From Macrostomum lignano (lineage: Eukaryota): a DNA stretch of 64,000 bases. Both the position numbers and the translations under genes were made by a program. Shown here in pieces: positions 2,898-57,100 of the stretch; the stretch's first letter is position 1, and the number at the start of each line of letters is the position of its first letter. The stretch spans positions 1-64,000 of the forward strand of contig NIVC01003216.1 of the NCBI GenBank assembly GCA_002269645.1, written 5' to 3'. Below the pieces are notes generated by a model. The model saw only the letters and a list, made by a program, of their open reading frames with translations. It was not told the DNA's origin and ran no database searches.

Positions 2898-4923
2898 ATG
2901 CTCGTACCATCGGTCATAGTTCTCGTTTTTCTGAAGCTACCCGTTTCTCTGACAGCCAGCAGTTCCGCTTTTTATCAACTACTGGAGCAGTCACCGCGTC
3001 CTGCCTGTCAAGGCCGCACCGCACCAATCGAAGAGGTGGCTTCGGTAGAAATAGCCGAACTGAATAACTCTCGAGCCTGTGCTTTGGCTTGCACCCTGGC
3101 TTTTGAAAACAATGACTCATGCTTTGCTTTCTACTTGTCCCAGTTCAATTCCTGCCGTCTGGTTGAATTTAACGTCCTGGTCAAGACGTGGCTTAACGCA
3201 TCTCTCTGTCCCGAGTCAGTCTACACTATGCCTATGCCTGGTGAGTGCATGTACCAAATATCTATCGCATACTTAATGGCACAGAGTTGAGCACGTTTTT
3301 ATCAGTTTCTAATAGTTCAAACGTGCATCACCGTTGGCAGCTCAGCTGATCAAATTTGTTTAAATTCGAGCTGAACCAACCCAGAGCAGACTTGAGCTAC
3401 TAGCGGTAATGTAAGCCGGCCTCAGTTGTCACAACCAAGAACTTGTCGGCACATTCGGCACGAACTCAAAACGACGACATAAAAATTGTGTTTACCGAGC
3501 ATGTGACAGCATATAGACCTAGTAACACTTCAAAACTATTGACAGTTTAGTAGGCATGACGATTGAGTGCCTAATTTCCCTCCAGCAATTACTACGCATA
3601 TTGAGATGTTAGCAGATTTTCCTGATAAAATCTACAATTTTTAATCTTCTATGCTTCCAAACATACTTTTACGTTTGATACCTTAAAGATTATTATTTTA
3701 CCTTACCCTTAGATCGTACACCCTGTCTACTGTATATGTGTCCTATCGTTCTACGAGCCATAACCTTTTGTGGGGAAACAATCTATCACGGCTAAAAATT
3801 GCATTATTTGCAGTCGAAAAATGCAATATTTGCTGAAGAATTTGTTTGACCAGGAAACTTGAGCTACCAGTTTGAATGAAAATCGGAACATTCTTTAGGA
3901 AATTCAATTTCAGCATTGTTGTCAACAGTCTGCTCCTGTGAAGCAAGCCGATAAAGTATTTTTTCATCTTTCATATTCATCGCTCAAATATTGACCAATC
4001 GATATCGAAAATATCTTTTCAGCAACGCGCATCTGAGAAAGCTATTCGTTTAAATACTCGTATTTTATATTAGGCTCAACTTGCAATATAAGGAACAAAT
4101 ACAGTAAGATTTTCAAGGGCTCTTACTCACATATGAGTATGTTTGGCGGCGGCCATCATACACACCAGATGGAGGCACGGAGGTATTTGCTAGTGTGTAC
4201 TCATACTTTGTCCATTTCTCGTGTTCCTTTTGTCGGTAGCCGGGACGCCCCTTGTGCGTCTGGTTGTAATAGAAAATAAGGCGATGGCGTACAGTGTGGC
4301 TGTTCAGCTCTCTTTTGTCGCAATAGAGGACAGATCCGACAACAAGCTTTTAAACTTTTGGCTAATGGCCCAAAAACGTGGCTCTGGTGATGATCAAGTA
4401 CTCGTAATCATTAACCCACGGAGCTACTAGTGATAATGCGAACCGGCCTTAAGGTTTGACCTTGCACAATCGAAAGCGTTACGCGCGCAATTCCAACGCT
4501 TATTCTAACCCATCAATTTCAGTTGAGACACGCATCAACCTGACCAACTGCCGGCAAAGCTCAGATCTCTGGGGCGGCGTCTGCTCCCGCCTCTTCGACG
4601 GCAATACTGATCAGAACTTTCGAAACGGTTACTGCAGCCACACGAGCGAGTCATCCAACCAGTGGTGGCAGACGGACATTGGTCCGGGCTATTACGTCAC
4701 CAAGGTTCAGATTTTCAATCGCCAGGACTGTTGCTCAGAACGACTCAATCAGCTTACGATCAGTGTGGATAGCCTCCAGTGCGTCGAATTTATCACCTCC
4801 GTTCCATTCTTTATTCGCAACTTCACCTGCGGTCGCTATGGCAACGTTGTGAAAATTCAAACTCCACTAAGCAAAGGTCTGGTAATGTGCGAGCTGTACA
4901 TCTTTGGAATTAGGGTTGCCTGA
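2898..4923 (+). CDS. Secreted PAN/apple + F-type lectin, copy 1 (exons 2898-3240, 4523-4923; 247 aa)
   Basis: Signal peptide MLVPSVIVLVFLKL; six-Cys PAN-like exon ending CCTG|GTGAGT; acceptor tttcAG|TT keeps phase 1. Exon 2 has the exact F-lectin motif H-X26-R-x-D-X4-R (SHT...NRQDCCSER). Confidence 0.9.
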
Positions 4924-6489
4924 ACTAGCATGGAACGGATGGATAATAAATGGTACAAAAATATGAGCGTAACAGATTGAATTTTGGGCTCTTTGAGTCT
5001 ACGTAATCTGCAAAGCCGTGATTGTCTATTTAAAAACAGATCAACGTTGATGAAAAATCGTCAAATATTTCTGCACCATATCCTACAAATTTATATTACC
5101 TTCGAAAAGAGCTTTATATGAGTAGCACTTATTTAGTATGCAGATCTTTCTAGGCATCAGTTTAAAATGCTACTATTCTTTATATTTCTGCCGCTCGTGT
5201 TGTCACACTGCGATCGAGACAATGCAGTCTTGTTTAAGCAGGCGATTAGCCTACTTTTTTTATCAATATTATCAGATCAGATAAAAGAGTAACTTTCAAT
5301 ATTTCCTTACCTGTTATATCACTGAAATTATCTATAACTTTGACATATTTGTTTTAATCAACCTTTTAGCTGACACACTGAATGCTGCATAAAATTTGTT
5401 TCGTCTCTACCCTCGTAGTTTAGTCAACTACTTAGCAGTAATACTTTTATTACCCGGTAAAACTGTAGTAATAAGCAGTGTGACCCAGAGATTTCCAAGA
5501 TAAATACTCGTATATTCAAAAATACAAGGTTGAATCAAATTCTATCTAGAACATTCTGGCTGTTCCAAGGCAAAATATAGTTACTAATAGTTTGTAAGCT
5601 TGGACTCAATATTTTATGAGTCAATATCAGTTCCATAGCAATCTCGAGAACTACCGCTTTTACGTCTTATTAATTTAGCACCGTTATAATGCTTCAATTG
5701 GATTTTAGAATGCCAATAGTAAAAAACTGCTTTGCCCATTAACGCAAGAGATAATATTCATCTATCAATACTATGAATAATTGAAGCAGATAGCTTAGAT
5801 AAATATAGATATACTCAGTATTGCTGGGAGAGTTTTAAAATAAACTAAGATTACCTGTTGCAGAAAGCGCGACCAACCGAACCAAACCGAATCTACAAGG
5901 ATATCAGCACGGAAAAGTTTTTCTCGTTAAATCAGATTTCGTTTACTTTTAAGAAAAGTATGAATAAATTTACTGACAAAAATATTTAATTAAAAATCTA
6001 AGACAGAGAAAAGTTTGTTTTATTTAAAACTTTGATTTCAATATAATTAATAGCTTCCATGGATTTGGATAAAAATGGCTACAAATTCTATTTTAGCTAC
6101 TGCTTTTTCTCCTAATGTATACTCAGCAACATACAAAAGTTGCCACTCTAGCGAGAGAGCTGAGGGGTAGCTTTAATTCGTCCAGCCTTCGCACAGCGCT
6201 ACCCCACTTCATTCCCCAACTCAAGTCTGCCTCGGCGTAGCTATAAGTTGTGCTGCTCGCAAAGATTGAGAGACTTTGCATGCACTCTCAAAAGTGGCGA
6301 CCACAGATGGGATTTTCTGTGATGGCGACTTTTCGATGTATCTGAGTAATATTGATTGTATTCCTTTCAGTAAGAAAACTTTCTGGAAGTTCTCGCAAAG
6401 TAAATTACCTAGGAAAGTAAGGATTACTTAGGTAATTACATGGGCTTTTTTTCAACTGGTTGAGCTGTTTTATTACCCAATTAACGTGT

Positions 6490-7006
6490 TGTAACGATGT
6501 TGATATTTAGTTGTTCGTAAATATTGTAATATGGTATTATTAATGTCTCCTTAGTATTGTATTAATTTATCTACTATTCATTAGCGAATTTTAAAGTTAT
6601 TCAATACGTACGCTTAAAATTTGTTTTACGGTATCTTTCATGGAAATATTGTTTAAATTATTTAAATATTTATTATTAAAAAGTAATATCTAAATTTTTT
6701 TATTTATTATTTATTATTTATTATTTATTATTATTTATTATTTATTGAAATAATTATTTAAAAGACTGTTAAATCGCGATTTTGCGCTAATCGGTCTCTT
6801 GTCTCGTGCTTTTCGGTTGGTCCGCCGCGTTGTGCCCGTTTGCAGTTGTTTAACATCAAAAAATTAACGGCGATAAAACTAAAAGTGTATCCTATCTCTT
6901 CAAATATATAGGATAAGACAAGTCAACTCGATTCGGCCGTAAGATTGTCTGATAATTTATTATTGTGCATAGCCGTCAGTACCGAACTCAGAAGGGTCTC
7001 GTCACA
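6490..7006. mobile_element. Solo LTR (517 bp)
   Basis: Termini TGTAAC...GTCACA with a 4-bp TSD GTGT on both sides. Both ends and an internal GTCCGCCGCGTTGTGCC block are shared with 59493-60871. Confidence 0.75.
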
Positions 7007-7278: not shown

Positions 7279-7790
7279 AAAGCAGAATCTGAACAAAGCA
7301 ACGCCAGGCGTTGCACTCGCAATTCTGCAGCTGCTGTTGGTGGTGCTTCTGCAGGCAGCTCAACCGGTGAACTTGATCCCACCAGTCCCCGATGGCCAGC
7401 AGAGCGGAACTACTGAAACGGGCTGCAGCATCGAACAATTCGAGCCTCAGAGCGCCATCTGGATGAACCAGTCAGCTGATCCAATTAGCCTATGGAAATC
7501 TGGGAACCGAACAAAACAACTTTGAGCCCTTCTTCTGACAAATCTTTGCTCCCCAAGAAAAATTTGGCCACCAACACAACAAAGAAGCAGCCTACTGAAA
7601 GCAATCGGATGCACCCCATCGTATATGCACGCCACTATAGTTCTGCAGGTTTTAGAGCTGGCCACCAAGGCATTCATTGAGCTGAGCAAATTCAACCAAG
7701 CCAAAGGCGGACACTGCTGACCAAAATCAGCTTTTTTCTTCAATGATTAAATTTTGTTGACGAATGATCGATTTTTTTAGATGACGACTG
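7279..7790 (+). pseudogene. Degraded secreted-protein gene fragment, possibly leucine-rich repeat
   Basis: Signal-like LAILQLLLVVLLQAAQP, then a frameshifted ...ESNRM...LQVLELATKAFIELS segment homologous to 31961-32245 (37 bp identical). The LRR call is inference from LxxLxL spacing. Confidence 0.3.
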
Positions 7791-7830
7791 CGTTGCAGGT
7801 AAAATTGGCCACTGAGAAAGTTCACTAGCC
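7790..7830 (-). pseudogene. Small remnant of an F-type lectin exon (FSVANFTCNA)
   Basis: CGTTGCAGGTAAAATTGGCCAC is identical to copy 2 exon 2 near 10528-10549. Confidence 0.6.
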
Positions 7831-7879
7831 TTCCTTGTGAGTCGTTTTGGTAATCAATAATTTTTCTTCAGGGCGCCAA

Positions 7880-8290
7880 AATATAGCGCTTACGGCGCTA
7901 AAATGAGTTCCTGCGGCGCTAAATGAGTGTCTGAGGCGCTAAAATGAGTGCCTGCGGCGCTAAAATGAGTGCCTGCGGCGCTAAAATGAGTGCCTGCGGC
8001 GCTAAAAGAGTGCCTGCGGCGCTAAAATGAGTGCCTGCAGCGCTAAAATGAGTGCCTGCGGCGCTAAAATGAGTGCCTGCTGCGCTAAAATGAGTGCCTG
8101 CTGCGCTAAATGAGTGCCTGCGGCGCTAAAATGAGTGCCTGCTGCGCTAAAATGAGTGCCTGCTGCGCTAAAATTAGTGCCTGCGGAGCTAAAATGAGTG
8201 CCTGCGGCGCTAAAATGAGTGCCTGTGGCGCTAAAATGAGTGCCTGCGGCGCCAAAATGAGTGCCTGCGGCGCCAAAATGAGTGCCAAAA
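7880..8290. repeat. 21-bp tandem minisatellite (AAAATGAGTGCCTGCGGCGCT)n, about 19 units
   Basis: Directly visible periodicity; the same unit occurs inverted at ~46070-46170. Confidence 0.95.
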
Positions 8291-8419
8291 TTAAGAAAAC
8301 AAATTCTAAATTCTATTATTTCCTTTATATCGAACTGCCAATATGCTGCCGATCTCATAACAGCATTGTATTTTATGTGGACTTTTCATGGTCTACTAAC
8401 TTTTAGCTATACCCAAATC

Positions 8420-10446: not shown

Positions 10447-11404
10447 TCAGTGGCCAAAAAACTCAATTTCGCATATATTCACTGCTTGCGACTGGGTGCT
10501 GTAGACCCGGAACCTGCTTCCAATAGCGTTGCAGGTAAAATTGGCCACAGAGTAGGAAACGTCGACGCGGTGGCACTCGACACCGTCCATTCTCAGCGAG
10601 AGCTTGTTCATTCGGCTAGTGCAACAGTCATTCCTATTGTAGATGGTGACGTACGAGACAAACACGGGCGTTTGAAATTGAGCTTCAAACCATTGATCAG
10701 CAGTATTTACAGTGTGGCTGCATGATTGTCCAGAAAATTTTGGATTTGTGTCACCGTCTATAGCTCGCTCGCAAACGCCGTTTAAGTAATTGCTGCTTTG
10801 AGTACATCCTACGGCATTAAGCTTCACGATATCTAAAATGATAGAGAATAGTTTGCACGCGCGTTGCAGCATAAAAGTATACGTAATAGCTATTTATTCT
10901 GTTATGACCGATGCAGATATAATTTAATACAATTAAATTACGTCGATATAATTATAGATTCAAGCATCGGTTTGGCCTTGAAAAAAGGACAAGTGCATCC
11001 AAAGTAATCTTTTTCTCGTCTTATTTGGCCTTTCCAAGTCTATTTGGGGTAAACTTCTATAAAAGAAAATCCCCTAGCTCACCGGGCATCGGTAGGACGT
11101 AAATCGACTCCGGACAGTGCGCAGTGTCAAGCCAGCTCTTTATGAAAGCGTCATATCTAACTAGTCGGCACCAGTTCGATTTCGTCATGTAAAATCCGAA
11201 GCACCACCTCGCCGTAGCCACAGTGCAGGCCAAGGCGCAGGCCGCTGCGTTATTCAGCCCGACCGGGTTCGACGCCACTTCAGGCGCAGGACTCGAGCTC
11301 GAACAGTCAGGAACAGGCGACTTTTGGAGAAGCTCGTAGCCACTAGAGCTCGTGGTGAACAGAGCGACCTGAGCGATCAGCAGAAACAGCAGCAGCGCTG
11401 GCAT
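10447..11404 (-). CDS. Secreted PAN/apple + F-type lectin, copy 2 (exons 11404-11083, 10832-10447; 235 aa)
   Basis: Signal MPALLLFLLIAQVALF; six-Cys PAN exon; donor CCCG|GTGAG; acceptor ttttAG|AT in phase 1; canonical H-X26-R-N-D-CCTS-R. Confidence 0.92.
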
Positions 11405-17930: not shown

Positions 17931-19144
17931 TTAGGCTCCGTAGACTTCGACCTCGCACAAATTAATCGACTTTACTGGGCGATTAGCGATGCGAAACCGG
18001 CTGCCAAACGCGTTGCAGCTAAAGCTGGACACGTTGAACGCCACCGTCAAATCCAGTCGGTTGCAATCGACACCATCAACTTGCAAGTTCACTTGGTTGA
18101 TTCGATCCGCACAGCAGTCTTGCCTGTTGTAGATGACGACATGCGAGATCAGAGCGGGAGCGGACAGCTCACCCTCCCACCAACCGGCCAAGTTATCCAT
18201 CGTGTGCGTACAAGACCCATCTTTAATTATTGGGCTTTTGTTACCGTCGATAGCTCTTTCGCAAACTTTGTTGCCATCAGTGGAGCTCTGGGTACAGCCG
18301 ATGAATTGGAGCTTCTCTGAATTGTGGAAAATAGGAATCTACTATTAGTCAGTCGGCTATTTTTTACGTGTAGTTAATAGGCTTTGCTAAATTTTTAACT
18401 CAGTCAAGAATTTCGATAATTTTCAAGGACTGATGCAACGCAACTTTCGGGGACAGATGGCAGAGTACTAGTAATATGTTTCTTAAGGTTACGCACGTAT
18501 TAGGTACACGCTGACGTGCATGTAAACGCACATCTATTCCAAAATATAATTTTCTGACGCTAGATTGGCTCATTTTGTTTTAGTAGTCGAATTTGTGACT
18601 GACGAGGCTAATTCTTGATTAGCTAGTCGAAACCTCTTAACTATGAGATTAGCCATTGACACCCGCAAGCACACGCCGTACCACTGAACCGTCACCTGGA
18701 ATCTTTCTTAATAGACCTCTTGTGCATCAATTGTCCAAATACTCAATATTAAGTGATTTATTATACTCTATAGACTGGACAGTTTATGGGGTGATCCATA
18801 AACTGCCGATAACTTTAATTTACAGCATGCTACCGTTCCAAGCACTCACTAGCTTCAACGGTGTACACGTCACACAGATCCGAGCTTTCCCACTCGTTGT
18901 TGTGGAATGCCAACAAGCTGAACAGTCGGCACAGACCCGGCATCCAGCTGAAACCAAAGCAGTTGCCAGCTTTTTCGGAGCAATCTTTGGCACATTGCAT
19001 CCTACCGATGCCAGCGATGGACTCGATGGCCACTGGGCTCGAGTAGCTGCGCATTCTCACCGCTGAAAACACCAATCGAGCCGTAATGGTGTCAAAAAGC
19101 ACAACAGACAAAAGCAGCAATGACAGCACGCGATTCCGTTTCAT
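17931..19144 (-). CDS. Secreted PAN/apple + F-type lectin, copy 3 (exons 19144-18850, 18316-17931; 226 aa)
   Basis: Signal MKRNRVLSLLLLSVVLF; CAKDC...CFGFSW...LCRLF; donor GCTA|GTGAGT; acceptor ttcAG|AG in phase 1; canonical THT...NRQDCCADR with 26-residue spacing. Confidence 0.92.
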
Positions 19145-23936: not shown

Positions 23937-24708
23937 CTAGTTGACGATGGTGTAGAGCTCAAGTTCGCAGATGTTGAGCGATTGCGAGGATCGATGGGCG
24001 ATCCGGAACGTGCTACCAAAGGCGTTGCAGCTGAACGAGCCAATTTTGTAGGTCTCGGCCAAGTTTAACACGTTGCACACGACGCCGTCCACCAGCAGGT
24101 TGACATTCCTTAGCCGGCCACCGCAGCAATCCTGCCGGTTGTAGATCGTGACGTAGGAGATGAGGGCAGGAACAGCCAGGTGCGCCTCCCACCAACCGGC
24201 GTATCCGTCGACGGTATGAGAGCAGGATTTATAGTACAAATTGGGATTCTTGTTTCCGTCGATGGCTCGTTCGCACACGTGGCCACCCTGATCGGAGCTT
24301 TGGTTGCAGCCGGCGATTTTGAGCATTTCTGAAGGTAGGAGAGGATTTTATTTACGAGTACAATGTATTTTACGTGATTTTAACCTAGAAAGAAGGTTAT
24401 CACAACACGATGCCCTCACCACTCTTCATAGTGTACACATCACACTCATCCGAGCGCTCCCACACGTCGCTAAAGAAAGCCGATAAGTCGAAGACGCGGC
24501 ACAGGCCCTTCAACCAGTTGAAGCCGAAGCAGTTTGACTTCTTCGTGCACATTTCTGCGCAGTTCAGTCGGTTGTTGCTCGGCGTGGTTTCTATGGCAAC
24601 AGGAGCCGAGACGCTGCGCTGTTTGACAGCGGTGAACACGATTTTGGCATCGATTCGTTCCAAAACGCCAGCAGAGATCAGCAGGAGTAAAAGGTTCGTG
24701 CAATGCAT
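23937..24708 (-). CDS. Secreted PAN/apple + F-type lectin, copy 4 (exons 24708-24420, 24328-23937; 226 aa)
   Basis: Signal MHCTNLLLLLISAGVL; CAEMC...CFGFNW...LCRVF; 91-bp phase-1 GT-AG intron; canonical SHT...NRQDCCGGR. Confidence 0.92.
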
Positions 24709-26441: not shown

Positions 26442-27260
26442 TTAACTCTTTAAAACACGGGTGTCGAACTCTCCGGTTGCTATGACAACAAAGATGCAGG
26501 CGACCCATATAGCTGGAATTCGCACAGACTCAACGCCTCGGCGACTTACTAGGCGAACTTGACTGCCGTAGCCAAAGCTTTTGAGCGCCAGCACAGAGAA
26601 GTACTGAACCCTGCTGTCCTCCTTGGCACATTCCATGCCGTTGACGAATAGAGTAAAATTGTTGAGCTTTTCCAAGCTCACGTCAAGCCTGTTGTCGATG
26701 CGACAGCCGTGACGCGGAACGGTTCAGCCGGCTCAGCCTGTCACCAACGATTTCCAGATTTGTGTAAGAAAACGAAATCTTGCGAAAAAAACGAAATTAG
26801 TACTTTTGTGGCCGTTTCCCGAATTGCAGGTGCCGCCAAAACTCCAGACGCTTTGACTGCACCCGCTAATTGCGATTGCTGATTGTGGTGCCGCTACTCC
26901 TAGATTCACGTTTTGGGTATTGTATTTCTCGCTTTATGGCAAAATCTTAACAAAAAATACTACATAAAATTGCGTCAGTATGCAGTACTAGGCAGACTTA
27001 CGGGAAATGCAACCGTGTGGACATTAACTTGGCCAAAGCTGTTCGGCCAGAGCGAGAGTTGCTGAAAAAAAGCAGATATGTTGAACAATCGGCAGGAAAG
27101 AGCGCTAGCCATCGCTTGCCAGTAGAATTCGAAACAAACATATTACTGAGTCCTGTACAGCAGGGCTCACTGCAGCTCACTCTGTACGGCTTGCACTGAC
27201 TGGTAGGGTGTCGGCATCATCAAAGCATCGGAGCTCGCTAGGTTGAGGCATTTCTTATCG
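26442..27260 (-). pseudogene. Divergent, degraded PAN + F-type lectin pseudogene
   Basis: Pieces ISGCSQS...TC, GNRW*QAE, DNRLDVSLEKLNNFTLFVNGMEC...FGYGSQVRL align with exon 2 but carry stops and frameshifts. An upstream exon-like piece ends at a GTAAGT donor near 27003; this part is weakly supported. Confidence 0.6.
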
Positions 27261-30096: not shown

Positions 30097-30895
30097 ATGG
30101 CTAGTAACTTTAATAAAATTATTTCTCTGCTACTCTGTGGCACAGTTCTGCATGGTGACGTATCGCAGCAGCAGGTGACATTCAAGCGTTTTAAACAGCG
30201 CAGTTTAATCGCGCCAGCCTTCATCGGATCTGCCGCTCTAGACAGACTGTTGTGCGCTGAGCACTGCTCAAAAATACCCAACTGCTACGGATTCAGCTGG
30301 TTGCAGCATCTGTGCCGATTCTTCAACCGGACAGCGTATAGAACCAAGGCCTGGCATCCATCGGCCAGTTGCGACCTATACTCTCGGCCACTCGGTAAGG
30401 CTTCTGCTGTCCAACGTAATTATTTTGTCTCATTGAATTAGCTTATAACTGAAACTCTCTTCCTTTCGAATACCAGTAGACAATGCGGAATTGCAACAGC
30501 TTGACTTCTCTGGCTGCCAGCAAAGTTCGCAGCGACGCGACGCCTCCTGTGTGCGCGCCATCAATGGAGATGCCAAGCAAAACTTCAAGTACGGATCCTG
30601 CTCTCACACAAGCGAGCGACCGGAAATGTTTCCAGCCTGGTGGGAGGCTAAGCTGCGGATTGCTGCTCATGTCTCTTTCGTCACCATTTACAACAGACAG
30701 GACTGCTGCGCTCACCGTCTCAACAAATTCTCGCTGCAGGTGGACGGCGTCGAGTGCAACCGAGTGAGCCTGAGACTGCCGTTCTCCGTGGCCAACTTTA
30801 GCTGCAATGCTTACGGCAGCCGAGTTCGAATATTGAGCCTCAAAGATTATAGCCTCACTATCTGCGAGTTTGAAGCCTTTGGATTCTACAAGTGA
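30097..30895 (+). CDS. Secreted PAN/apple + F-type lectin, copy 5 (exons 30097-30394, 30477-30895; 238 aa)
   Basis: Signal MASNFNKIISLLLCGTVL; CAEHC...CYGFSW; donor CTCG|GTAAG; acceptor ccAG|TA in phase 1; motif H-X29-RQDCCAHR. Confidence 0.92.
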
Positions 30896-37147: not shown

Positions 37148-37564
37148 CGGCAAAAAACAAAACCCATAGCAGAAAACTTGCTTAAGGAGAAAAATAAAAT
37201 TCCAGCTTAAGCTACTGTAGCCTCCCGCATGGGTTACTTCTTCGGGACCCACAGAAGCTGTCTGTCAGAGAGAAAAGTTTGTCTTAATTTGTGCAATATC
37301 CAGCCATGCCAGGGTCTCCCTGGCATGAGAATGAAAGCTTAGCTGCTCTGAAGCTCGATCCCGAATGGCGAGATGAATTTGGCGCTAACTACAATAGCTT
37401 AGGAATTTTTTCATTTAAGTAAGTTCATTTTCTTTCTCTGCTTCTCCATCGGACGCAGGCCGAGAACTCTGACTGGGAACCTGTGGGTCGCAACTTCCCA
37501 ACAGGTTAGGCTGCAGGCCAGCGCACCTGAGGAAAAGGGCGCACAACAAGTGCAAAGACTTGGA

Positions 37565-37706
37565 TCGAGTGCAACCGAGTGAACCTGACGATGCCGTTCT
37601 CCGTGGCCAGCTTCAGTTGCTTCAGTTAACTTCGGGAGCTGAGTTCGAGTTCAGAGTCTCGTCACTAATTAATCACCTGCTTTTGAGCGAAGTTGAGGTA
37701 TACTAA
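37565..37706 (+). pseudogene. 3' fragment of an F-type lectin exon 2, paralog of copy 6
   Basis: TCGAGTGCAACCGAGTGAACCTGACG...GAAGTTGAGGTATACTAAAATTCTGCGGCATC matches 43525-43670 with indels. Confidence 0.85.
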
Positions 37707-42911: not shown

Positions 42912-43657
42912 ATGCCCTCGAAAACTCTACTCTTAGCTTTGGTGGTCATCCTGGCTGCTCGACCGTCAACTCAGGATCCTGTTTTTCAAGTGGTAAAAAT
43001 GGGTGCATCCGAGGCTCCAGCGGTCGCTAAATCCGTGCCCGGCTTCAGTTCGATCGACTGCGCTATGAAATGCGCTGAAATTACTGGCTGCTTTGGCTTT
43101 AATTGGCTGCAAAATCTTTGTGGTCTTTTTAACATTAGCTCCTATGAGAATGCCTGGACGGGCTGCAACAACTGCGACGTTTTTATTCTACCTAGTAAGT
43201 AAAATTTTCGACTCATATCTATAACATAGAGATGTAGTTTTGTATTGCCGTATTGAAATTTTCAGTGCCCCAGAAGAAGAGAGCAGCCAACTGCACGCAG
43301 AGTTCCACGTACTCCACTACGAATCACCTAAGCGTTTGCGAGAGCGCGATTGACGGAAACAGGTCGCAACTGACAGCTCTCTGCAGCATCACGCAAAATG
43401 GTCCAAACGAGTGGTGGGAAGTGGAATTGGTCAACGCTACTTGGATCAAGTATGTCACCATCTACAACAGGCAGGAGTGCTGTCAGGAGTGGCTCAACAA
43501 ATTATCGCTGCAGGTGGACGGCGTCGAGTGCAACCGAGTGAACCTGACGGTGCCCTTCTCCATTGGAAACTTCAGCTGCAACGCCTTCGGGAGCCGAGTT
43601 CGAGTCCAAAGTCTCGTCACAAATTATCTAATTTTGTGCGAAGTTGAGGTATACTAA
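42912..43657 (+). CDS. Secreted PAN/apple + F-type lectin-fold protein, copy 6, non-canonical sugar site (exons 42912-43194, 43266-43657; 224 aa)
   Basis: Signal MPSKTLLLALVVILAA; 71-bp phase-1 intron CCTA|GTAAGT...ttcAG|TG; open frame; motif reads I-X26-R-Q-E-CCQE-W. Confidence 0.9.
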
Positions 43658-45613: not shown

Positions 45614-46974
45614 ATGTGTTCCACAATCCTATTCTCGTGGCCAATACTCGTAATTTTATCATTCAACAGCTCGCAGCAGGTCAAGTTTGATTTGGTTAAA
45701 AAGGACAGTGGCACAGCTTCAACTGCCATGGAGGCTGCATCAGTCGGCAATAGAGTAGCCTGTGCAGTCAGGTGTAGCCAACAGACAGCTTGCTTCGGTT
45801 TCAGCTGGGTAACGCAATCTGTGCAGGCTGTTCAATGTCAGTGCCTATCTTCGAGCAGACTGGCAAAATTCATCCAAATGTAGCCTCTACACACGAGCTT
45901 ACGGAAAAGGTATGCTTTACTAATTGCCGCTGCAAATCGACGCGACAAGAGGCCATGAGGGAAGCCTGAGGTAGCCCATAGTTTTAGCAATACCCTGATG
46001 GGCGTCGCCATGGATTTTATGGTGGGGGGACAAAGCCAAGAATTCTACATTTTATAATCCTGCATCCTACTCATTTTAGCACCGCAGGCACTCATTTTAG
46101 CACCGCAAGCACTCATTTTAGCGCCAAAAGCACTCATTTTAGCGCCGCAGGCACTCATTTTAGCGCCGTAGGCGCTACGTTTTTGTCGCCATGCAGCAAA
46201 ATTATTGATTTCCACAATGGGCCACAAGGTGGGGTGGGGGGCACAAAGCACTGGCATGTCCCCCCAGATCTTTTACTGGGGGGGGGACATGTCCCCCCCT
46301 GTCATCCACCCCTTGGCGACGCCCCTGAATACCCTAATATCAACAGGAAAACTTGAAAAGTCTGGTTTTGTACAGCAATCCGACGCTACATTTCATCGAC
46401 GGATAAAGACGTCATACGTCGGTTGAACGTCGGTATAATGTAGAAATACATATTTGTCAGCCAACATCGGATTGCTGTACGGGATTCCGTTGTGCGGGAC
46501 ACTGTTATTGGTATTCTTACGAGCTAGCATCAGTAAAAATTAGCATTTACATGTATATGCTCGTATGGTTTAAAACGTATTCCAGAACGCGCTGTTCTAC
46601 GTACCACCGGCTGTAACCAGAGCTCAATGCACACAACGCATAGCTGTGACCTAGCCATCGATGGCAACAGGGACCAGTTCAATTCTAGCATTTGCAGCGC
46701 TACAGAATCTGCCGCCAACCAGTGGTGTGGGAGATGCAGCTCGCAAAGAGACAACACATCAAGTACGTCACCATCTACAACAGGCAGGACTGCTGCGCTT
46801 AGCGGCTCAACCACTTCTCACTGCAGGTGGACGACGTTGAGTGCAACCGAGTAAACCTGACGAAGCCGTTCTCCGTGGCCAACTTCAGCTGCAACGCCTT
46901 CGGCAGCATGGTCCGCGTGCAAAACTTGCAGGCTACATTTCTTAACGATTTGAGGGTTTGAAATTTACGACTAG
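45614..46974 (+). pseudogene. PAN + F-type lectin copy 7, pseudogene (exons ~45614-45909, 46586-46974)
   Basis: Frameshift after CFGFSW near 45812, frameshift at TGGTGTGGG near 46725, in-frame TAG in CCA*R near 46800, His replaced by Ala (CSAT). Confidence 0.88.
45997..46327. mobile_element. hAT-type MITE in the copy 7 intron
   Basis: TIRs GATGGGCGTCGCCA / TGGCGACGCCCCTG; 8-bp TSD AATACCCT at 45989-45996 and 46328-46335; carries about five units of the 21-bp minisatellite. Confidence 0.85.
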
Positions 46975-49294
46975 AGCATGCAAATGTCGTCCCCAACAAT
47001 TAAACTTACTGAACAAAATAATTTGAAATAGTAAAGTTCGATTTTATTATAATCCTATGTCGTTGTCACATAGAGATTCCAATTTCTTAACGTTAACGTA
47101 AATGCGCTTTAACGAGTCACTAACTGAAGCGAACAAAAGTTCCAAGAGTATGTTTTAAAAAACAAATATTTCTGGTCACTTACCTTGAAACTCGGGGGTA
47201 AGCAAACACTTTTAAATTAAGGGCCAGATACAGAATCCAGCTCATGACTGCAGACCAGAGAGAATAGAAAAAGAAGAGAGGGTAAAGTGGGGAGATGAGA
47301 AAGGAGACGGGAGAGGAGGGAAGAGAAGAGAGAGGGGAGATGGGATATGAGAAAACAGAGGGAGAAAAGGAGGCAGCTAAGAACAGACACAAGACTTGAG
47401 CGGACCCGAATTGCTATTGTGAAGTTTCAAAGTGCTGTGGCTATAAGCCAAGCTGAACCATAAACAAAATGGTTTGCCTCCCAGTGCACCGTACGCTTTA
47501 GCAATCTACGTGTAACGAGAGCAAGCTAGGCTTGCAGAAATAAATATATAATGAGACAAGAGTCGAAGATCGGCTGGTTTTAATATAGTCTTAAGTTCGT
47601 GACTTGTTCCTTTGACTAGTCATAAAAACAAAAGACACAACACACAGGACCCGAGGGCCGTATAGAGAGGCTTCGTGGCCGCAGGCCGAAGCTTGCCGGC
47701 CGACCCCTGTTTTAAAACAAAGCTTCTAAAATTCTAAAGTACAAGCATGAAACCAAGAAAAAATTTGGAAATATATAATTTACTATGTTACAACAGCCTC
47801 TGCAGAGAGTACTTGAATCGTCGGACTGATTCATAATGAGATTTATTCGGAATAGGAAGATGTTATTTTTGTTTAAATACCGTTAATAAGTTAAAAACAA
47901 AGGATTTAGAATACTGCATATAGCTGGTTTGGAAAGAAGACTATGACTGTGGTAAAAAGCCAGTCGAAATAATTTTATCGTGATTAGTTACTGCAAGTAG
48001 AAAAGTAATGTATTAACATGCATTCATAGTGGCCAATCAAAATCCAAGGTCGTCCAAGCAAATGCACAGCGTTCAAACTTTATCAATTGTAAAGGCAGAG
48101 ATCAGAAACAGACGGAATATTCAGGCTTTTTCAGGAATCTACAACTGAAATTATTCATAAAACCGAAGTTGACTAAGTGGTTAATCATGCGAAATAAAGT
48201 TATAATACTTCTATTCCTTTCTGCCAGTAGAATCACCATGGCAACCATTGCTACTATACCTATTTAATCGTTAAATCCAGCAGCCCAGTTGCTCCCCCAT
48301 CGATGGAGGAGGTGGTGCAGGACGAAAACCCGCTGTTTTGCGCTAGAAAATGCACGAATCAAGTGTTGGGCTGCTTCGGCTTCAGCTGGATCCAGGGACT
48401 GTGTCAGTTCTTCAATCTCTCCGCGTTTTATAATTCGACTTGGGACAAGTGTGATGCTGTTGACTGCAAATTCGATGTTTACAAGAGACATCTCGGTGAG
48501 CTTTGATCGGAATAATAACACGAATATGGACAATTGGAGTAGCAACACGATGTACTGCAGTGGCGCACGCAGCGGGGGACAAGAAGGACAGCAAGACAAA
48601 AGTTTCGCTACTCCAAAACCTCCAAAAACTACATAATATGGGCGACCATGCAAGCTCGACGAATCGCAGTGCCTACACTTTTGCTACTTTTGGACATAGC
48701 ATCAACCGGTCTAAGAGACAGGCTTGTGGCACCAAGAGCCAGGGACACCCACCAAGAGACAGGGGGCTCTCACCAAGAGACAGGGGCGCTCACCAACGTT
48801 CTGCCAGAATGTCTTGTTTTTCAATAAGCGCCCATGTGTTCCATACACCTAGTGTACCAATCAGCACTGTGCCTCAGTGCGGTCTTGCCAAGCTTTCAAA
48901 TTTCATTAGCACGCCGATTTCTGACTTTGGCAGCCACTGGCCTTATCCAAATCTTCAAAAAATAGCACCAGGGTGCTATGGACACCGACCTGCTGTGGAC
49001 TATGGCACAGATGAAGCCTCGACAGTGTGCAAATCTCAACTGCAAGTTGCTTTCAACAGTTTCTTAAGTACTCAGTCATCACCCCGACGCCGTCGGCACC
49101 TTCTGCAGGTAGCCGTCTTGGCAAAATCATTGACTATCTGAACGTTCCAGATAGCTAGCGACATCAAGTTGCTCCTTTGCTCCGTTCAGGAGCAGCAAAA
49201 CTTTTCTAGAGAGAGGGGGGGGCGAATTTTACTTTGTATAAAAAACGCGGCTATTTTTTGTACTTTTACTGTTAAAAACTGTGTAAATAACTCC

Positions 49295-49305
49295 TAAATA
49301 AATAA

Positions 49306-49337
<32 letters not shown>

Positions 49338-49342
49338 AAATA
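49295..49342. repeat. (AAAT)n microsatellite
   Basis: Visible tetranucleotide run in the copy 8 intron. Confidence 0.85.
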
Positions 49343-49728
49343 AACTCTAGTGTAAATAACTCCTACTGTGTAAATCTCATGATGGCTAAAATAATCAATC
49401 CCGCTATCAAATCTTAGAACCGCGTCGTTTGAACACTTCAAACTGCGAGCAGAGCAGCCTGATTCACGATGGTGTCTGCACCCGAGCCATAGACGGCAAC
49501 ACTGGCCAATATTACACCACGGGATCCTGCTCCCACACTGAATACGGCAACGGCCAGTGGTGGAAAACACAGCTATCCACATCTGCTCTTGTTTCCTACG
49601 TCACCATCTACAACAGACAGGACTGCTGCGCCTACCGACTCAACAAATTCTCGCTGCAGGTGGACGGTGTCGAGTGCAACCGAGTGAACCTGACTGGGCC
49701 GTTCTCCGTGGCCAACTTCAGCTGCAAC

Positions 49729-50113
49729 CATAGATAAAGTATACATAGATTCCACCCCTGCCCCCGCGGAGTGTCTAAATTGTGACCATCACTTTATTCA
49801 CTGCGCTCCTATTGGCTGGGCCACGCTATGCACATTGAGTCCACGTGTGTACATTCCCCCAACTCCGGAACACTTGCGTGTCGACTTCATTCTTGCTAAA
49901 CTGTTGAAACTGGTAAGACATCCTTTCGTTCCGCGCATTAAAGTTATAAAGCTTTCTTGTGTGGAATGGGTCAGGGAATGAAATCGAAGGGGTTGAAAGG
50001 AAGGCTTTCGCGCCAGCCAATGAGAGCACGGTGAGTTTTATGGTGGTCAAAGTTTGGACACGAGCGTGTGTACATTCTGGGCAGGGGTGGAATCTATGTA
50101 TACTTTATCTATG
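49729..50113. mobile_element. MITE with 35-bp perfect TIRs and 8-bp TSD (P- or hAT-like)
   Basis: CATAGATAAAGTATACATAGATTCCACCCCTGCCC at 49729-49763 and its reverse complement at 50079-50113; TSD GCTGCAAC at 49721-49728 and 50114-50121. Confidence 0.93.
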
Positions 50114-50291
50114 GCTGCAACGCCTTCGGCAGCCGAGTTCAGGTGCAGAGCCTTCTGCCATATGAACTTACAATCTGTGAAATAGAGATTTATGGGATTG
50201 TGTGATGTAACAACAATGACGGTGATATCAAACTCGTAAATCTGGTCTGAATATCAAAGCAAGATACATGTAGACAAAAAATCGACAAAAT

Positions 50292-55509: not shown

Positions 55510-55991
55510 TAATAACACCCGCCTCAATTTTGTGCTCGAGAGGGGTGTGGGGGTAAAGCCCCCACATTTGTACCATCGACACATTTCCAAAAGAAGTGTC
55601 AGTGTAGTTACCATCTAGTCTGCTTCAGTTAGAAAGACGGAAACGCAAGTTTAGAGCGCAGGAGAGACATTCATCATGGACTTCTATACTTCTATGGCAT
55701 CTTTTTCTCTGCACACTGCTAATATATATAACAACATGCAAATAATTCGTTCCCAATCACAAGTAGTCCTGCCTGAATATAAAATTAATCAGTTTGAATT
55801 TGCGTCGTTGCCTCGCGATAAAAAATTAAATACATTTCTGATGGCCTCATGTGGTAACGCGAATTTTTTCGCTTCCAGTCCAGATGCTAAGTATAGAAGT
55901 CCATGCATTGATAGACTCGGCTTCGCCTCGGCCTGAGAAACGCATCCTGGACTTTCTTTCCCATAGAACAAAATCGAGGCGGGTGTTATTA
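55510..55991. mobile_element. Probable non-autonomous TIR element (~480 bp)
   Basis: 23-bp inverted repeats TAATAACACCCGCCTCAATTTTG / CAAAATCGAGGCGGGTGTTATTA (one mismatch) with TA-rich flanks. Confidence 0.55.
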
Positions 55992-56804
55992 TACACATCC
56001 ATTCGAATTCACAGCTGAGCACTTTGCTAGTAGTCCAGTTGACTACTAAACCGAGGACCGTGAAGACGATAAGCGATCAACTAAGATCATTATAACAGTC
56101 ATTTTTTTCCATTTTCGCCTTTGAAATTAGAACTCAAAAGTTTTATATCCAATCCAAGAGCAATAAAAAGCAGCCTTCACTTTAGGTCTAGCTGCATACA
56201 ATACTTTTGTAAAATACAAGATTTAAAAAAGGACGTAAAGCGTTCTGTGACTGATTTTCCTGATACTACATGGCTTTGACTATCATGGTGTACTCTATCC
56301 GAGCTTACTTTTTCAAAAATGAAGCTTGGCAGACTGCTTAGTTCTGTGCAGTCTGTTTCGGATTCTACTGCCTGGTTGATTCGTGCCGACTGTTCAACGC
56401 GTCTGCCTTTACCAGCAATCAATGGCGAATCGTTCATCATCCTATCGACGTCCATTTTCAGTAAGTTGCGCACGTAATGTACATGTAAAGTGAAACCAGA
56501 GTTTACCCTTGGTTTTCTTAGTTTACTCGTAGTTTACTCATAGTTCAGTCAAAGTTTACTTCAAGTTTATCCATCGCTTACCGTGATAAAGCAATTGTAT
56601 CAGGATACCCGCAACGAACGGTGGGTGGATTATAAAGAAAAGTAGTAAAAACTTAATTACAATATCATCCTATCTTACTGATGCTTTCTCTAAACAGATC
56701 TTTTCGAAATTCGCAAGAGATGTAGCTCGCAGTAGTGTTAGAGAAAGAGAGAGAGAGAGAGAGAGAGAGTTCTTGTGCAACTATTGCTCGGATTATAACA
56801 ATGA

Positions 56805-57100
56805 AGCTGGACACTGTTGAAAACCTATCGACGGAAGCACATGCAAGTCAATTTTTGGGGGATCGTGCAGCCACACTCTACAAGCTGGAAATCAATGGTG
56901 GGACGGTGAGAGGGGCAGCTGGCCGCTACATCGTTTTGTCTCTTGCGTCACCATCTACAACAGACAGGACTGCTGCGCCTACCGGTTCAATGAATTCTCG
57001 CTGCAGGTGAACGGCGTCGAGTGTAACCGAGAGAACCTGACGGAGCTGTCCTCTGTGTGGCCAATTTCAGCTGCACCGCTTTCTGCTAGCTTATGCGCTG
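56805..57100 (+). pseudogene. Orphan F-type lectin exon 2 pseudogene
   Basis: HC*KPIDG...GSCSHT...QWW...VTIYNRQDCCAYRFNEFSLQVNGVECNR, then a frameshift; no PAN exon recognised upstream. Confidence 0.85.

What the first reader, a model, noticed from the sequence alone, without database searches (positions are those of the whole stretch)
2898..57100. Expanded, diversifying cluster of secreted PAN/apple-F-type lectin genes
Seen: twelve copies or remnants in 55 kb, six with intact ORFs. All full-length copies have the same two-exon layout (signal+PAN | F-lectin) with a phase-1 intron of 71-1282 bp. Framework motifs (CxQSS, AIDG, CSHT, WW, IYNRQDCC, VDGVEC, NFxCN, CE) are kept while the intervening loops differ in every copy. 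Known: these loops correspond to the CDR-like loops around the fucose pocket of eel agglutinin-type lectins, and diversified F-lectins act in innate immunity and in gamete recognition (oyster bindin). Inferred: a birth-and-death repertoire of bifunctional glycan receptors, with PAN as a second binding or oligomerisation module. I cannot tell whether this family has been described.
Basis: partly seen in the sequence, partly recalled or inferred. Interest (0 to 1): 0.8.

Follow-up and report, generated by a model that had tools for sequence, protein, structure and literature searches.

The report
Flatworm PAN–F-type lectin gene cluster
This stretch of the flatworm Macrostomum lignano genome carries an old tandem family of small secreted two-domain sugar-binding proteins (a PAN/apple module fused to a fucose-type lectin), six intact and six decayed; it is a real and previously unstudied variant of a well-known lectin family rather than a new kind of system.

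Summary
There are twelve copies or remnants between 2.9 and 57.1 kb. Six are intact two-exon genes (signal peptide + PAN | F-type lectin domain) with canonical GT-AG phase-1 introns of 71, 82, 91, 250, 533 and 1282 bp. The window is Macrostomum lignano: my spliced model of copy c8 is residue-for-residue UniProt A0A1I8G576. Exon 2 is a true F-type lectin by sequence, by fucose and Ca2+ motifs, and by predicted fold (top structural hit eel agglutinin 1K12). Exon 1 is a PAN/apple fold. Variability is concentrated in loops CDR1, 2, 3 and 5 around the sugar pocket, while the pocket itself (CDR4) is conserved.

"Birth-and-death" is supported by frameshifted, truncated and transposon-hit copies. "Diversifying selection" is not shown. 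Synonymous sites are saturated between all copies, so these are ancient duplicates under overall purifying selection, and fast loops may simply reflect relaxed constraint.

PAN+FTLD was found only in M. lignano among the sequences I could search, and it is absent from the F-lectin reviews I read. The layout fits exon shuffling of a phase 1-1 lectin exon. The biological role (immunity, reproduction or adhesion) remains unknown. Moderate interest.

The parts
2898..4923 (+). c1, intact gene. Exon 1 is 2898-3240 (signal peptide + 6-Cys apple-type PAN; an upstream in-frame ATG lies at 2850). The intron is 1282 bp, phase 1. Exon 2 is 4523-4923 (FTLD). It is the most divergent copy; its Ca motif reads LFDGN.
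7786..7821 (-). Remnant of about 12 aa (FSVANFTCNAV) of a lectin exon. It lies next to the same 21-mer satellite that sits in the c9 intron.
10447..11404 (-). c2, intact gene. Exon 1 is 11404-11083 (signal + 6-Cys PAN). The intron is 250 bp, phase 1. Exon 2 is 10832-10447 (FTLD, canonical triad). UniProt A0A1I8J113 is a shortened model of this gene.
17931..19144 (-). c3, intact gene. Exon 1 is 19144-18850. The intron is 533 bp, phase 1. Exon 2 is 18316-17931 (FTLD, canonical triad).
23937..24708 (-). c4, intact gene. Exon 1 is 24708-24420 (PAN_1 above the Pfam cut-off). The intron is 91 bp, phase 1. Exon 2 is 24328-23937 (FTLD, canonical triad). This copy was used for the structure models.
26538..27136 (-). 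c5, heavily degraded PAN + FTLD pseudogene. The PAN scrap is 27038-27136 and the FTLD scrap is 26538-26699.
30097..30895 (+). c6, intact gene. Exon 1 is 30097-30394 (PAN_1 above the cut-off). The intron is 82 bp, phase 1. Exon 2 is 30477-30895 (FTLD). The triad residues are present, but there is a 3-aa insertion between the His and the first Arg, and the Ca motif reads AINGD.
37564..37669 (+). c7, a C-terminal FTLD scrap (ECNRVNLTMPFSVASFSC...) beside a 1.4-kb 10-mer minisatellite.
42912..43657 (+). c8, intact gene, identical to UniProt A0A1I8G576. Exon 1 is 42912-43194. The intron is 71 bp, phase 1. Exon 2 is 43266-43657. The fucose triad is degenerate (His->Ile, Asp->Glu, second Arg->Trp), CDR1 is 4 aa longer and CDR2 is 2 aa shorter.
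45614..46946 (+). c9, pseudogene. The signal peptide and PAN carry a frameshift; the FTLD carries frameshifts and an in-frame stop (CCA*RL). A 21-mer satellite lies in the intron (46085-46168).
48258..50205 (+). c10, a recently disabled copy. The PAN exon (48258-48495) has no ATG or signal peptide. The splice sites are kept. The FTLD exon (from 49407) is split after ...ANFSCN by a 385-bp MITE.
49729..50113 (.). MITE inside the c10 lectin exon. It has perfect 35-bp terminal inverted repeats (CATAGATAAAGTATACATAGATTCCACCCCTGCCC) and an 8-bp target-site duplication GCTGCAAC (49721-49728 and 50114-50121).
   Evidence: read directly from the sequence
56348..57114 (+). c11, degraded pseudogene with stops and frameshifts. 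It is the closest relative of c10 (87% over 122 nt).

Best explanation
This is a tandem multigene cluster in Macrostomum lignano. Each intact gene encodes a protein of about 205 residues after signal-peptide removal, with an N-terminal PAN/apple module and a C-terminal F-type lectin domain (FTLD).

Shown: the FTLD keeps the eel-agglutinin fold, the Ca2+ site, the three disulfides and, in most copies, the His/Arg/Arg fucose triad with the adjacent Cys-Cys. The loops that form the extended sugar-binding site (CDR1, 2, 3 and 5) are the most variable parts of the protein.

Inferred mechanism: each paralogue binds terminal L-fucose (or, for c8-type copies that lost the triad, some other ligand) in a conserved primary pocket. 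The paralogue-specific loops set which larger glycans are accepted. The PAN module adds a second binding or oligomerisation surface, so the proteins can cross-link or tag glycan-bearing surfaces outside the cell.

Inferred origin: a single-exon, phase 1-1 FTLD module was joined by exon shuffling to a signal+PAN exon that ends in phase 1. Repeated local duplication and at least one inversion followed, with long retention under purifying selection and sporadic gene death by frameshift, truncation and transposon insertion.

The biological setting is not determined. My best guess is extracellular recognition of microbial or food glycans at body surfaces (innate or mucosal defence).
For: Gene models and splice phase. 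The c8 model is exactly UniProt A0A1I8G576. An intronless paralogue, P0006, joins the two domains at the same point.

FTLD identity: Pfam F5_F8_type_C and F5_F8_type_C_2 are above their cut-offs in all five second exons scanned (c3 was not scanned). phmmer against the PDB gives FBP32 at 2e-17 and eel agglutinin 1K12 at 5e-13, ungapped from AIDGN to CCxxR. The AF2 model has pLDDT 81, and its top Foldseek hits are 1K12, 3CQO, lectinolysin and SpX, ahead of generic discoidin/CBM32 domains. H-X26-R-x-D-CC-xx-R is present in c1 to c4 and c10, matching His52/Arg79/Arg86 of AAA (PMC5712786).

PAN identity: PAN_1 is above its cut-off in c4 and c6. The domain model has pLDDT 92.5, and its first 28 structural neighbours are all PAN/apple-type modules (29 of the first 30).

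Loop variability: entropy is 2.05-2.55 bits in CDR1/2/3/5 against 1.15 elsewhere and 0.96 in CDR4 (Mann-Whitney p = 1e-8). Differences between 70-86%-identical M. lignano paralogues are typically 2-4-fold (up to 7-fold) enriched in these loops.

Age and constraint: pS is 0.52-0.92 with intact ORFs, and framework pN is 0.16-0.43.

Exon shuffling: in the FTLDx3 gene P0025, the signal-peptide exon ends in phase 1, and the two internal FTLD exons (405 and 414 nt) have phase-1 introns on both sides; the third FTLD is the terminal exon and is entered in phase 1.

Gene death.
Against: There is no direct evidence of transcription, secretion or sugar binding for any copy. Signal peptides were judged by eye (hydrophobic N-termini, low pLDDT), not by a dedicated predictor. 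PAN_1 is below the Pfam cut-off in c1, c2, c3 and c8, and the Foldseek E-values for the PAN model are weak (0.03 or higher). Loops are the least constrained part of most proteins, so their variability does not itself prove functional specialisation. c8 lacks two triad residues. c6 has altered His-Arg spacing and Asn in place of the Ca-binding Asp. c1 has LFDGN. So fucose binding cannot be assumed for all six. The immune or mucosal role is analogy only.
Confidence: 0.72

Rival explanations
1. The proteins are reproductive: seminal-fluid, sperm-surface or egg-coat lectins whose loops diversify under sexual selection or conflict. This would be analogous to oyster sperm bindin, in an outcrossing hermaphrodite known for fast-evolving reproductive genes.
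For: FTLDs act in gamete recognition in oysters (PMC12221842, PMC5712786). The copies are small secreted proteins with variable ligand-contact loops. M. lignano is a sexual-selection model with many lineage-specific prostate transcripts (PMC5977470).
Against: The supplements of the prostate in-situ screen (PMC5977470) contain no fucolectin, FTP, apple or lectin term, although these are short tables. The copies are ancient with saturated dS, not the recent rapid turnover typical of seminal proteins. The architecture and genetics differ from bindin, which is a single gene with FTLD repeats, recombination and alternative splicing.
Confidence: 0.15
2. The proteins are structural or cross-linking components of mucus or of the temporary-adhesion system. 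They would bind the animal's own glycoproteins rather than foreign glycans.
For: Glycan-lectin interactions are central to M. lignano adhesion, and lectin-like and discoidin-like domains recur in invertebrate adhesives (titles and abstracts returned: PMC6410801, PMC4890501, PMC9382459). The two-module design suits cross-linking. Copies c3, c4, c6 and c8 have an odd Cys count, which could allow covalent dimers (alignments).
Against: The published M. lignano adhesive proteins are large and different. No paper links FTLD or PAN proteins to adhesion in this species. A self-glycan binder would not be expected to need many paralogues with different loops.
Confidence: 0.1
3. The family is largely decaying and non-functional. 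The loops differ because the copies drift neutrally, and the intact ORFs are survivors by chance.
For: Half of the copies are pseudogenes. Loop pN is close to pS. Four of the six intact genes are absent from existing protein sets.
Against: Six ORFs of 224-247 codons with intact splice sites, all structural Cys, the Ca site and (in five) the triad have persisted while synonymous sites saturated. Framework pN is only 0.16-0.43 against pS 0.52-0.81. Neutral drift over that distance would have destroyed them, as it did c5, c9 and c11.
Confidence: 0.03

Closest known systems
Eel fucolectins / Anguilla anguilla agglutinin (AAA, PDB 1K12) and the seven A. japonica eFL isoforms
   Same: Both are single-FTLD secreted lectins. 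They share the same fold, the same His/Arg/Arg triad with identical spacing, the same Cys-Cys next to the pocket, the same Ca2+ ligands and the same three disulfides. Both occur as multiple isoforms in one animal, differing mainly in CDR1 and CDR2 (PMC5712786).
   Different: The eel proteins have no PAN module, and their isoforms are 68-78% identical, whereas these paralogues are 28-55% identical. The flatworm FTLDs carry an extra invariant Cys pair bracketing CDR1 (C-x-Q-S-S...C-x-x-A-I-D-G), which is absent from all solved FTLDs aligned here. Oligomeric state is unknown.
Striped bass FBP32 (3CQO) and other tandem-FTLD lectins of fish, amphibians and molluscs
   Same: This was the best sequence match in the PDB (2e-17). 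The idea of two binding modules on one chain able to cross-link ligands is shared.
   Different: In those proteins the second module is another FTLD, and here it is a PAN/apple domain. The exon structure also differs: the MsaFBP32 FTLD exons are split by introns (PMC5712786), whereas here one exon encodes one FTLD.
Oyster sperm bindin (Crassostrea gigas)
   Same: Both use an FTLD as a diversified recognition module, with sequence variation around the binding face.
   Different: Bindin is a single-copy gene that makes 1-5 FTLD repeats by recombination and alternative splicing, and positive selection has been shown for it (PMC12221842). Here there is a multigene tandem array of old paralogues, each with one FTLD plus PAN, and selection is untested.
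Apicomplexan PAN/apple lectins (Sarcocystis SML-2, Toxoplasma MIC4)
   Same: The PAN module's predicted fold matches them (TM about 0.56-0.58). They show that PAN/apple domains can themselves bind galactose-type sugars.
   Different: Sequence similarity is negligible. Their sugar-binding residues were not compared. They lack an FTLD.
Other M. lignano FTLD proteins (FTLDx3 P0025; WSC+FTLD P0022 and P0017; 6xFTLD+Kringle P0014)
   Same: The FTLD subtype is the same, with the Cys-bracketed CDR1. At least in P0025, one exon encodes one FTLD, with phase-1 boundaries.
   Different: They have different partner domains and copy numbers. The PAN+FTLD genes form their own subfamily: at least 20 database entries, all from M. 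lignano.

Membership tests
F-type lectin domain (FTLD) | Fucose-binding motif: His, then Arg-x-Asp-x4-(Arg/Lys). It is written HX24RXDX4(R/K) in the reviews. In AAA the residues are His52, Arg79 and Arg86, which means 26 residues between the His and the first Arg. | tested here: met
   c1, c2, c3, c4 and the c10 fragment have H-X26-R-x-D-C-C-x-x-R, aligned without gaps to 1K12. Exceptions: c6 and c11 have X29 because of a 3-aa insertion, and c8 has Ile, Glu and Trp in place of His, Asp and the second Arg. So the motif is met for 4 of the 6 intact copies, altered in 1 and lost in 1.
F-type lectin domain (FTLD) | Ca2+-binding motif h2DGx, plus the Ser before the conserved Cys and the C-terminal Cys-Glu ligands | tested here: met
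   AIDGN or AIDGD is present in c2, c3, c4 and c8. c1 has LFDGN and c6 has AINGD. Position -1 of the conserved Cys (AAA Ser49) is Ser only in c2, c3, c4 and c6; it is Tyr in c1 and Leu in c8. The C-terminal C-E is invariant (ligand list from PMC5712786).
F-type lectin domain (FTLD) | F-type jelly-roll fold | tested here: met
   The AF2 model of c4 has pLDDT 81. The Foldseek PDB search ranks 1K12 first (E 1.6e-9, TMt 0.68), and ranks 2-11 are all solved F-type lectins.
F-type lectin domain (FTLD) | Conserved disulfides (AAA Cys50-Cys146, Cys82-Cys83, Cys108-Cys124) | tested here: met
   Cys at the aligned positions (c4 C132/C217, C164/C165, C181/C197) are invariant or nearly so in 15 family members. 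Bond formation itself was not tested.
F-type lectin domain (FTLD) | Actual binding of L-fucose or fucosylated glycans | not testable with these tools
   This needs recombinant protein and a glycan array or haemagglutination inhibition.
PAN/apple domain | Match to the PAN_1 profile above the curated threshold | tested here: inconclusive
   c4 (24.9 bits) and c6 (23.1 bits) exceed the 21.4-bit cut-off. c8 scores 14.1 bits. c1, c2 and c3 have no hit. All six align to one another with the same Cys framework.
PAN/apple domain | PAN fold: a beta-sheet wrapped round one helix, with a core of four Cys | tested here: met
   The domain model has pLDDT 92.5. Its first 28 Foldseek neighbours are all PAN/apple-type modules (29 of the first 30): plasminogen (TMq 0.70, rmsd 2.5), Eimeria PAN 1HKY, FXI/kallikrein, SML-2, MIC4, HGF and SRK. 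E-values are only 0.03-0.9. Four core Cys are invariant.
PAN/apple domain | Apple-type third (outer) disulfide linking the N- and C-terminal ends | tested here: inconclusive
   c1 and c2 have the extra N-terminal Cys to pair with the C-terminal Cys. c3, c4, c6 and c8 keep only the C-terminal one, which leaves 13 Cys in the mature protein.
Birth-and-death multigene family | Tandem paralogues that diverge independently, with intact genes and pseudogenes side by side | tested here: met
   There are 6 intact and 6 degraded copies. There is no sign of homogenisation, since pS is saturated for every pair. The physically neighbouring pairs c3/c4 (55% identity) and c10/c11 (87% over 122 nt) are each other's closest relatives, and c6 (53%) and c8 (51%) are both closest to c10.
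Diversifying (positively selected) recognition repertoire | dN/dS > 1 at ligand-contact sites | tested here: inconclusive
   CDR pN is 0.41-0.72 against pS 0.53-0.92, with pS saturated. Substitutions are enriched in the CDRs in closer paralogues, but no DNA was available for them.

The most novel reading that the evidence does not exclude
The PAN+FTLD genes, with their disulfide-stapled hypervariable CDR1 loop, form a germline-encoded, positively selected recognition repertoire specific to macrostomid flatworms. It might serve microbe discrimination, or partner or sperm recognition in a hermaphrodite. In this reading PAN acts as an obligatory co-receptor or oligomerisation module, and triad-less members (c8, P0009, P0006) have been re-tooled for non-fucose ligands.
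Probability: 0.15. Interest if true: 0.65.

Novelty: new variant of a known kind. Interest (0 to 1): 0.4.

Why it matters
F-type lectins are a well-studied recognition module. The reviews I could read list C-type lectin, pentraxin, CCP, FA58C and transmembrane partners, but not PAN/apple.

This cluster gives a compact natural series: six old paralogues with one scaffold, one conserved pocket and different loops, plus one copy that has lost the pocket. It sits in a flatworm that is transparent and open to RNAi and transgenesis, so the question of what loop variation in a lectin repertoire does could be tested directly.

The cluster also gives a clean example of domain shuffling through a phase 1-1 exon. 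In addition, it shows that current automatic gene models for this family are incomplete: four genes are missing, one is mis-spliced, and others elsewhere in the genome are fused.

It does not reveal a new kind of system.

Tried and rejected
1. dN/dS within the window. Nei-Gojobori estimates for all 21 pairs (7 sequences, including a comparison-only c10) gave saturated pS, so no test of positive selection is possible from this DNA.

2. DNA for closer paralogues. P0010, which is 89-90% identical to c8, is not on record in the contig index. Most M. lignano family members are UniRef-only, so only protein-level loop enrichment could be done.

3. Exact look-up of the six spliced proteins. Only c8 is in the 15-billion-protein collection, so there is no transcript-derived confirmation for the others.

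4. Literature. Six full-text searches combined Macrostomum with F-type lectin, fucolectin, apple, PAN, FTP, discoidin, lectin, fucose, coagulation factor and similar terms. None found a paper on this family. The Weber 2018 supplements had no hit. Bishnoi et al. 2015 (the survey of FTLD architectures) is not held, so I cannot exclude that PAN+FTLD is tabulated there.

This has no biological meaning.

6. I considered that the units might be exons of one giant gene. I rejected this because each unit has its own hydrophobic N-terminus and a stop codon directly after the FTLD, and because the orientation flips between c1, c2-c5 and c6-c11.

7. Rfam at gathering threshold found nothing in the window.

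8. No poly(A) tail or target-site duplication was seen around the intronless paralogue P0006, so whether it arose by retrocopying or by intron loss is undecided.

Full report
WHAT IS THERE

The window is eukaryotic. It contains a Ty3/gypsy polyprotein, minisatellites and split ORFs. tblastn with the ORF translations, followed by a family HMM run against every stop-to-stop fragment of the six-frame translation, finds PAN-type and lectin-type exons at twelve places between 2850 and 57114.

Six units are intact: c1, c2, c3, c4, c6 and c8. Each begins with an ATG followed by a 10-14-residue hydrophobic stretch. Each has a first exon that ends one base into a codon at a G|GTRAG or A|GTRAG donor, and a YAG acceptor that restores the frame. 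Each has a stop codon directly after the last strand of the lectin domain. The intron lengths are 1282, 250, 533, 91, 82 and 71 bp, all in phase 1.

The other six units are dead or dying:
- a 12-residue scrap at 7786-7821;
- c5 (26538-27136), heavily eroded;
- c7 (37564-37669), a C-terminal scrap;
- c9 (45614-46946), with frameshifts in both exons and an in-frame stop;
- c10 (48258-50205);
- c11 (56348-57114), with stops and frameshifts.

c10 is informative. Its splice sites and most of its reading frame are still good. But its PAN exon has lost the ATG and signal peptide, and its lectin exon is split after ...ANFSCN by a 385-bp MITE. The MITE has perfect 35-bp terminal inverted repeats and an 8-bp target-site duplication. 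Removing the element and one duplicate restores an open frame (done for comparison only). So this copy was inactivated recently.

SPECIES AND INDEPENDENT SUPPORT FOR THE GENE MODELS

All close protein matches come from the free-living flatworm Macrostomum lignano. My spliced c8 protein (224 aa) is identical from first to last residue to UniRef100_A0A1I8G576, "FTP domain-containing protein, M. lignano". This fixes the species. It also shows that an independent annotation chose the same junction.

c2 corresponds to A0A1I8J113, but that model uses a later acceptor and skips the first half of the lectin exon. The other four intact genes are not in the 15-billion-sequence collection at all.

A paralogue elsewhere in the M. 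lignano assembly (P0006, locus L001) is intronless. It joins the PAN and lectin halves at precisely the position of the intron. That is what a retrocopy of a spliced mRNA, or a precise intron loss, would look like.

None of this is direct transcript evidence.

WHAT THE DOMAINS ARE

Second exon. Pfam F5_F8_type_C_2 and F5_F8_type_C are above their cut-offs in all five second exons scanned; c3 was not scanned. More specifically, phmmer against all PDB chains returns only F-type lectins: striped-bass FBP32 (2e-17), eel agglutinin 1K12 (5e-13), the pneumococcal fucose-binding modules and lectinolysin. The alignment to 1K12 is ungapped from AIDGN through CCxxR.

That alignment puts the family's CSHT His on AAA His52. 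Its NRxDCC Arg, Asp, Cys and Cys fall on Arg79, Asp81, Cys82 and Cys83, and the next Arg falls on Arg86. It likewise places the Ca2+ ligands and the Cys50-Cys146 and Cys108-Cys124 partners (residue roles from PMC5712786).

An AlphaFold2 model of c4 (pLDDT 81) has 1K12 as its best PDB neighbour, followed by ten more F-type lectin chains. Muskelin discoidin and CBM32 domains come after those.

The motif census gives the following:
- c1, c2, c3, c4 and the c10 fragment carry H-X26-R-x-D-C-C-x-x-R;
- c6 and c11 have three extra residues between the His and the first Arg, and c6 has AINGD instead of AIDGx;
- c1 has LFDGN;
- c8 has Ile for His, Glu for Asp and Trp for the second Arg.

The c8 changes are shared with its 89-90%-identical paralogue P0010. 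Other M. lignano members (P0009, P0006, P0007) have lost one or more triad residues in other ways. So a triad-less sub-lineage is being maintained rather than simply decaying.

First exon. PAN_1 is above its threshold only for c4 and c6. However, all six first exons align with four invariant Cys. A domain-only AF2 model is confident (pLDDT 92.5). Its first 28 PDB neighbours are all PAN/apple-type modules (29 of the first 30): the plasminogen N-domain (TMq 0.70), the Eimeria PAN module, factor XI and prekallikrein apple domains, the HGF N-domain, plant S-receptor kinase PAN, and the galactose-binding apicomplexan lectins SML-2 and MIC4. The E-values are weak, as expected for 75 residues, but the list is homogeneous.

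c1 and c2 carry the additional outer Cys pair of true apple domains. c3, c4, c6 and c8 keep only the C-terminal member of that pair, which gives the mature protein 13 Cys.

HOW THE COPIES DIFFER

Across 21 family members, per-column entropy in the FTLD averages 2.13, 2.05, 2.55 and 2.39 bits in the segments that align to CDR1, CDR2, CDR3 and CDR5. It averages 1.15 bits in the rest of the domain and 0.96 bits in CDR4, which is the binding motif (Mann-Whitney p = 1e-8). Indels also fall there: CDR1 is 4 aa longer and CDR2 is 2 aa shorter in c8, and CDR3 is 3 aa longer in c6 and c11.

Among M. lignano paralogues that are still 70-86% identical, differences are typically 2-4 times (up to 7 times) more frequent in these loops than elsewhere. 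The Fisher p value is below 0.05 in 15 of the 17 such pairs, with the strongest at 4e-5; the pairs are not independent.

The evolutionary adjective is not established. Between the window copies, synonymous differences are saturated (pS 0.52-0.92), and amino-acid identity is only 28-55%. Framework pN is 0.16-0.43. Loop pN is 0.41-0.72, close to pS but never clearly above it.

The safe conclusions are these:
- the duplications are ancient;
- fold, pocket and Cys framework have been held by purifying selection for a very long time, since six ORFs surviving that much divergence cannot be chance;
- the loops are either nearly unconstrained or positively selected, and this DNA cannot say which.

The physically neighbouring pairs c3/c4 and c10/c11 are each other's closest relatives, and c6 and c8 are both closest to c10. 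The orientation pattern (+, then four -, then six +) indicates local duplication plus at least one inversion.

ORIGIN OF THE ARCHITECTURE

In the M. lignano gene for the FTLDx3 protein P0025, I recovered the unique exon structure that reproduces the protein. A signal-peptide exon ends in phase 1. The two internal FTLD exons (405 and 414 nt) are flanked by phase-1 introns on both sides, and the third FTLD is the terminal exon, entered in phase 1. The FTLD is thus a symmetric 1-1 module in this genome. The window genes are that module placed behind a signal+PAN exon that also ends in phase 1. This is the textbook geometry of exon shuffling.

M. lignano also has WSC+FTLD and 6xFTLD+Kringle proteins, so the module has been moved repeatedly.

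These flatworm FTLDs share an extra Cys pair bracketing CDR1 (C-x-Q-S-S-[variable]-C-x-x-A-I-D-G). Among 185 collected proteins the pattern occurs 38 times in the 29 entries first labelled M. lignano. It occurs only 11 times among about 470 FTLD motifs in the others, and five of those seven proteins proved to be M. lignano as well. I infer, but have not shown, that it forms a disulfide staple at the base of the most variable loop.

HOW WIDESPREAD THE ARCHITECTURE IS, AND WHETHER IT IS KNOWN

An exhaustive profile search of 1.84 billion representative proteins gave 9796 hits. In the 150 best, the only proteins matched across both halves were from M. lignano. The rest were multi-FTLD proteins of molluscs, fish, amphibians, echinoderms, an alga and bacteria, matched only over the lectin half.

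A PAN-only HMM of the family hits nothing but M. lignano entries among all 185 proteins gathered. The alignment-seeded search of 5.8 billion clusters agrees.

There are caveats. Only the top 150 of the exhaustive search are visible. Macrostomorph genomes other than M. lignano are poorly represented. The one systematic survey of FTLD architectures (Bishnoi et al. 2015) could not be read.

The two Vasta-group reviews list CTLD, pentraxin, CCP, FA58C and transmembrane partners, and do not contain the word "apple". No paper in the searchable library connects Macrostomum with this family.

MECHANISM AND ROLE

Shown: the domain identities, the conserved primary site in four to five copies, the variable extended site, the secretory-type N-termini, and the absence of any membrane anchor after the FTLD.

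Inferred: Ca2+-stabilised fucose binding, with paralogue-specific fine specificity set by CDR1, 2, 3 and 5; a second interaction surface or oligomerisation through PAN, possibly a covalent dimer through the unpaired Cys in the c3/c4/c6/c8 type; and a changed ligand in c8.

The biological setting is a guess by analogy. I favour extracellular recognition at surfaces exposed to microbes and food (about 0.35-0.4), over a reproductive role (about 0.15) or an adhesive or mucus role (about 0.1). The remaining probability is unassigned.

VERDICT

The finding is real and was accurately described. It is unproven on "diversifying" and on bifunctionality.

This is a lineage-specific variant (a new partner domain, a Cys-bracketed CDR1 and an old tandem array) of a well-known lectin family, in a tractable model animal. 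It is worth an expression look-up and a few recombinant proteins, but it is not a surprise of the first order.

Noticed in passing
window 50292-55028: A complete Ty3/gypsy LTR retrotransposon lies 87 bp downstream of the c10 stop codon. Its two 241-bp LTRs (50292-50532 and 54788-55028) are 100% identical. It has one uninterrupted 1338-codon ORF with zinc-knuckle, RT, RNase H and integrase domains. It looks like a very young, possibly still active insertion.
   Followed up: partly
window 49729-50113: A 385-bp MITE with perfect 35-bp terminal inverted repeats and an 8-bp target-site duplication (GCTGCAAC), a size typical of hAT-type elements. Its family and copy number in the genome were not examined.
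   Followed up: partly
window 7893-8288 (+) and 46085-46168 (-): The same 21-mer satellite (CGGCGCTAAAATGAGTGCCTG) occurs next to the 7786-7821 lectin scrap and inside the intron of pseudogene c9. In both cases it is antisense to the gene and upstream of the lectin exon. The scrap is therefore probably the remains of a c9-like copy that already carried the satellite.
   Followed up: partly
window 22340-23199, 35705-37144, 61891-62284: Three large minisatellites: a 15-mer x57 (98% matches), a 10-mer AGGACAGTGG x144 with strong GC and AT skew, and a 30-mer x12.6. They generate long spurious ORFs in several frames. c7 sits at the edge of the 10-mer array.
   Followed up: no
L001 10001-10657 (M. 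lignano NIVC01001584.1): Paralogue P0006 is intronless and solitary within 20 kb. It has Gln for the triad His and Gly for the Asp. It could be a retrogene or a case of precise intron loss. No poly(A) tract or flanking duplication was seen.
   Followed up: partly
UniProt entries A0A1I8J113 (P0166), A0A1I8GNT1 (P0001), A0A1I8GI06 (P0024): Automatic models of this family are often wrong. One skips half a lectin exon of window gene c2. Others fuse neighbouring genes (two PAN+FTLD units, or FTLDx3 plus a PAN+FTLD unit). Four intact window genes have no model at all.
   Followed up: partly
window genes c3, c4, c6, c8 versus c1, c2: Mature c1 and c2 have 14 Cys, with a 6-Cys apple-type PAN. c3, c4, c6 and c8 have 13 Cys. 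The Cys near the end of the PAN module has no obvious partner, which hints at an intermolecular disulfide or a PAN-FTLD link.
   Followed up: no
proteins P0015 (Bryopsis sp. KO-2023) and P0154 (JGI metagenome): These are the only non-Macrostomum proteins among about 150 top FTLD hits that carry the Cys-bracketed CDR1 pattern typical of M. lignano FTLDs. It is an odd taxonomic echo (a green alga) that may be convergence or transfer.
   Followed up: no
window 1095-2159 (-): A 354-codon ORF at the window's start has no Pfam match at E<=0.01. It overlaps other long ORFs on both strands. It is probably a degraded mobile element, but it remains unidentified.
   Followed up: no
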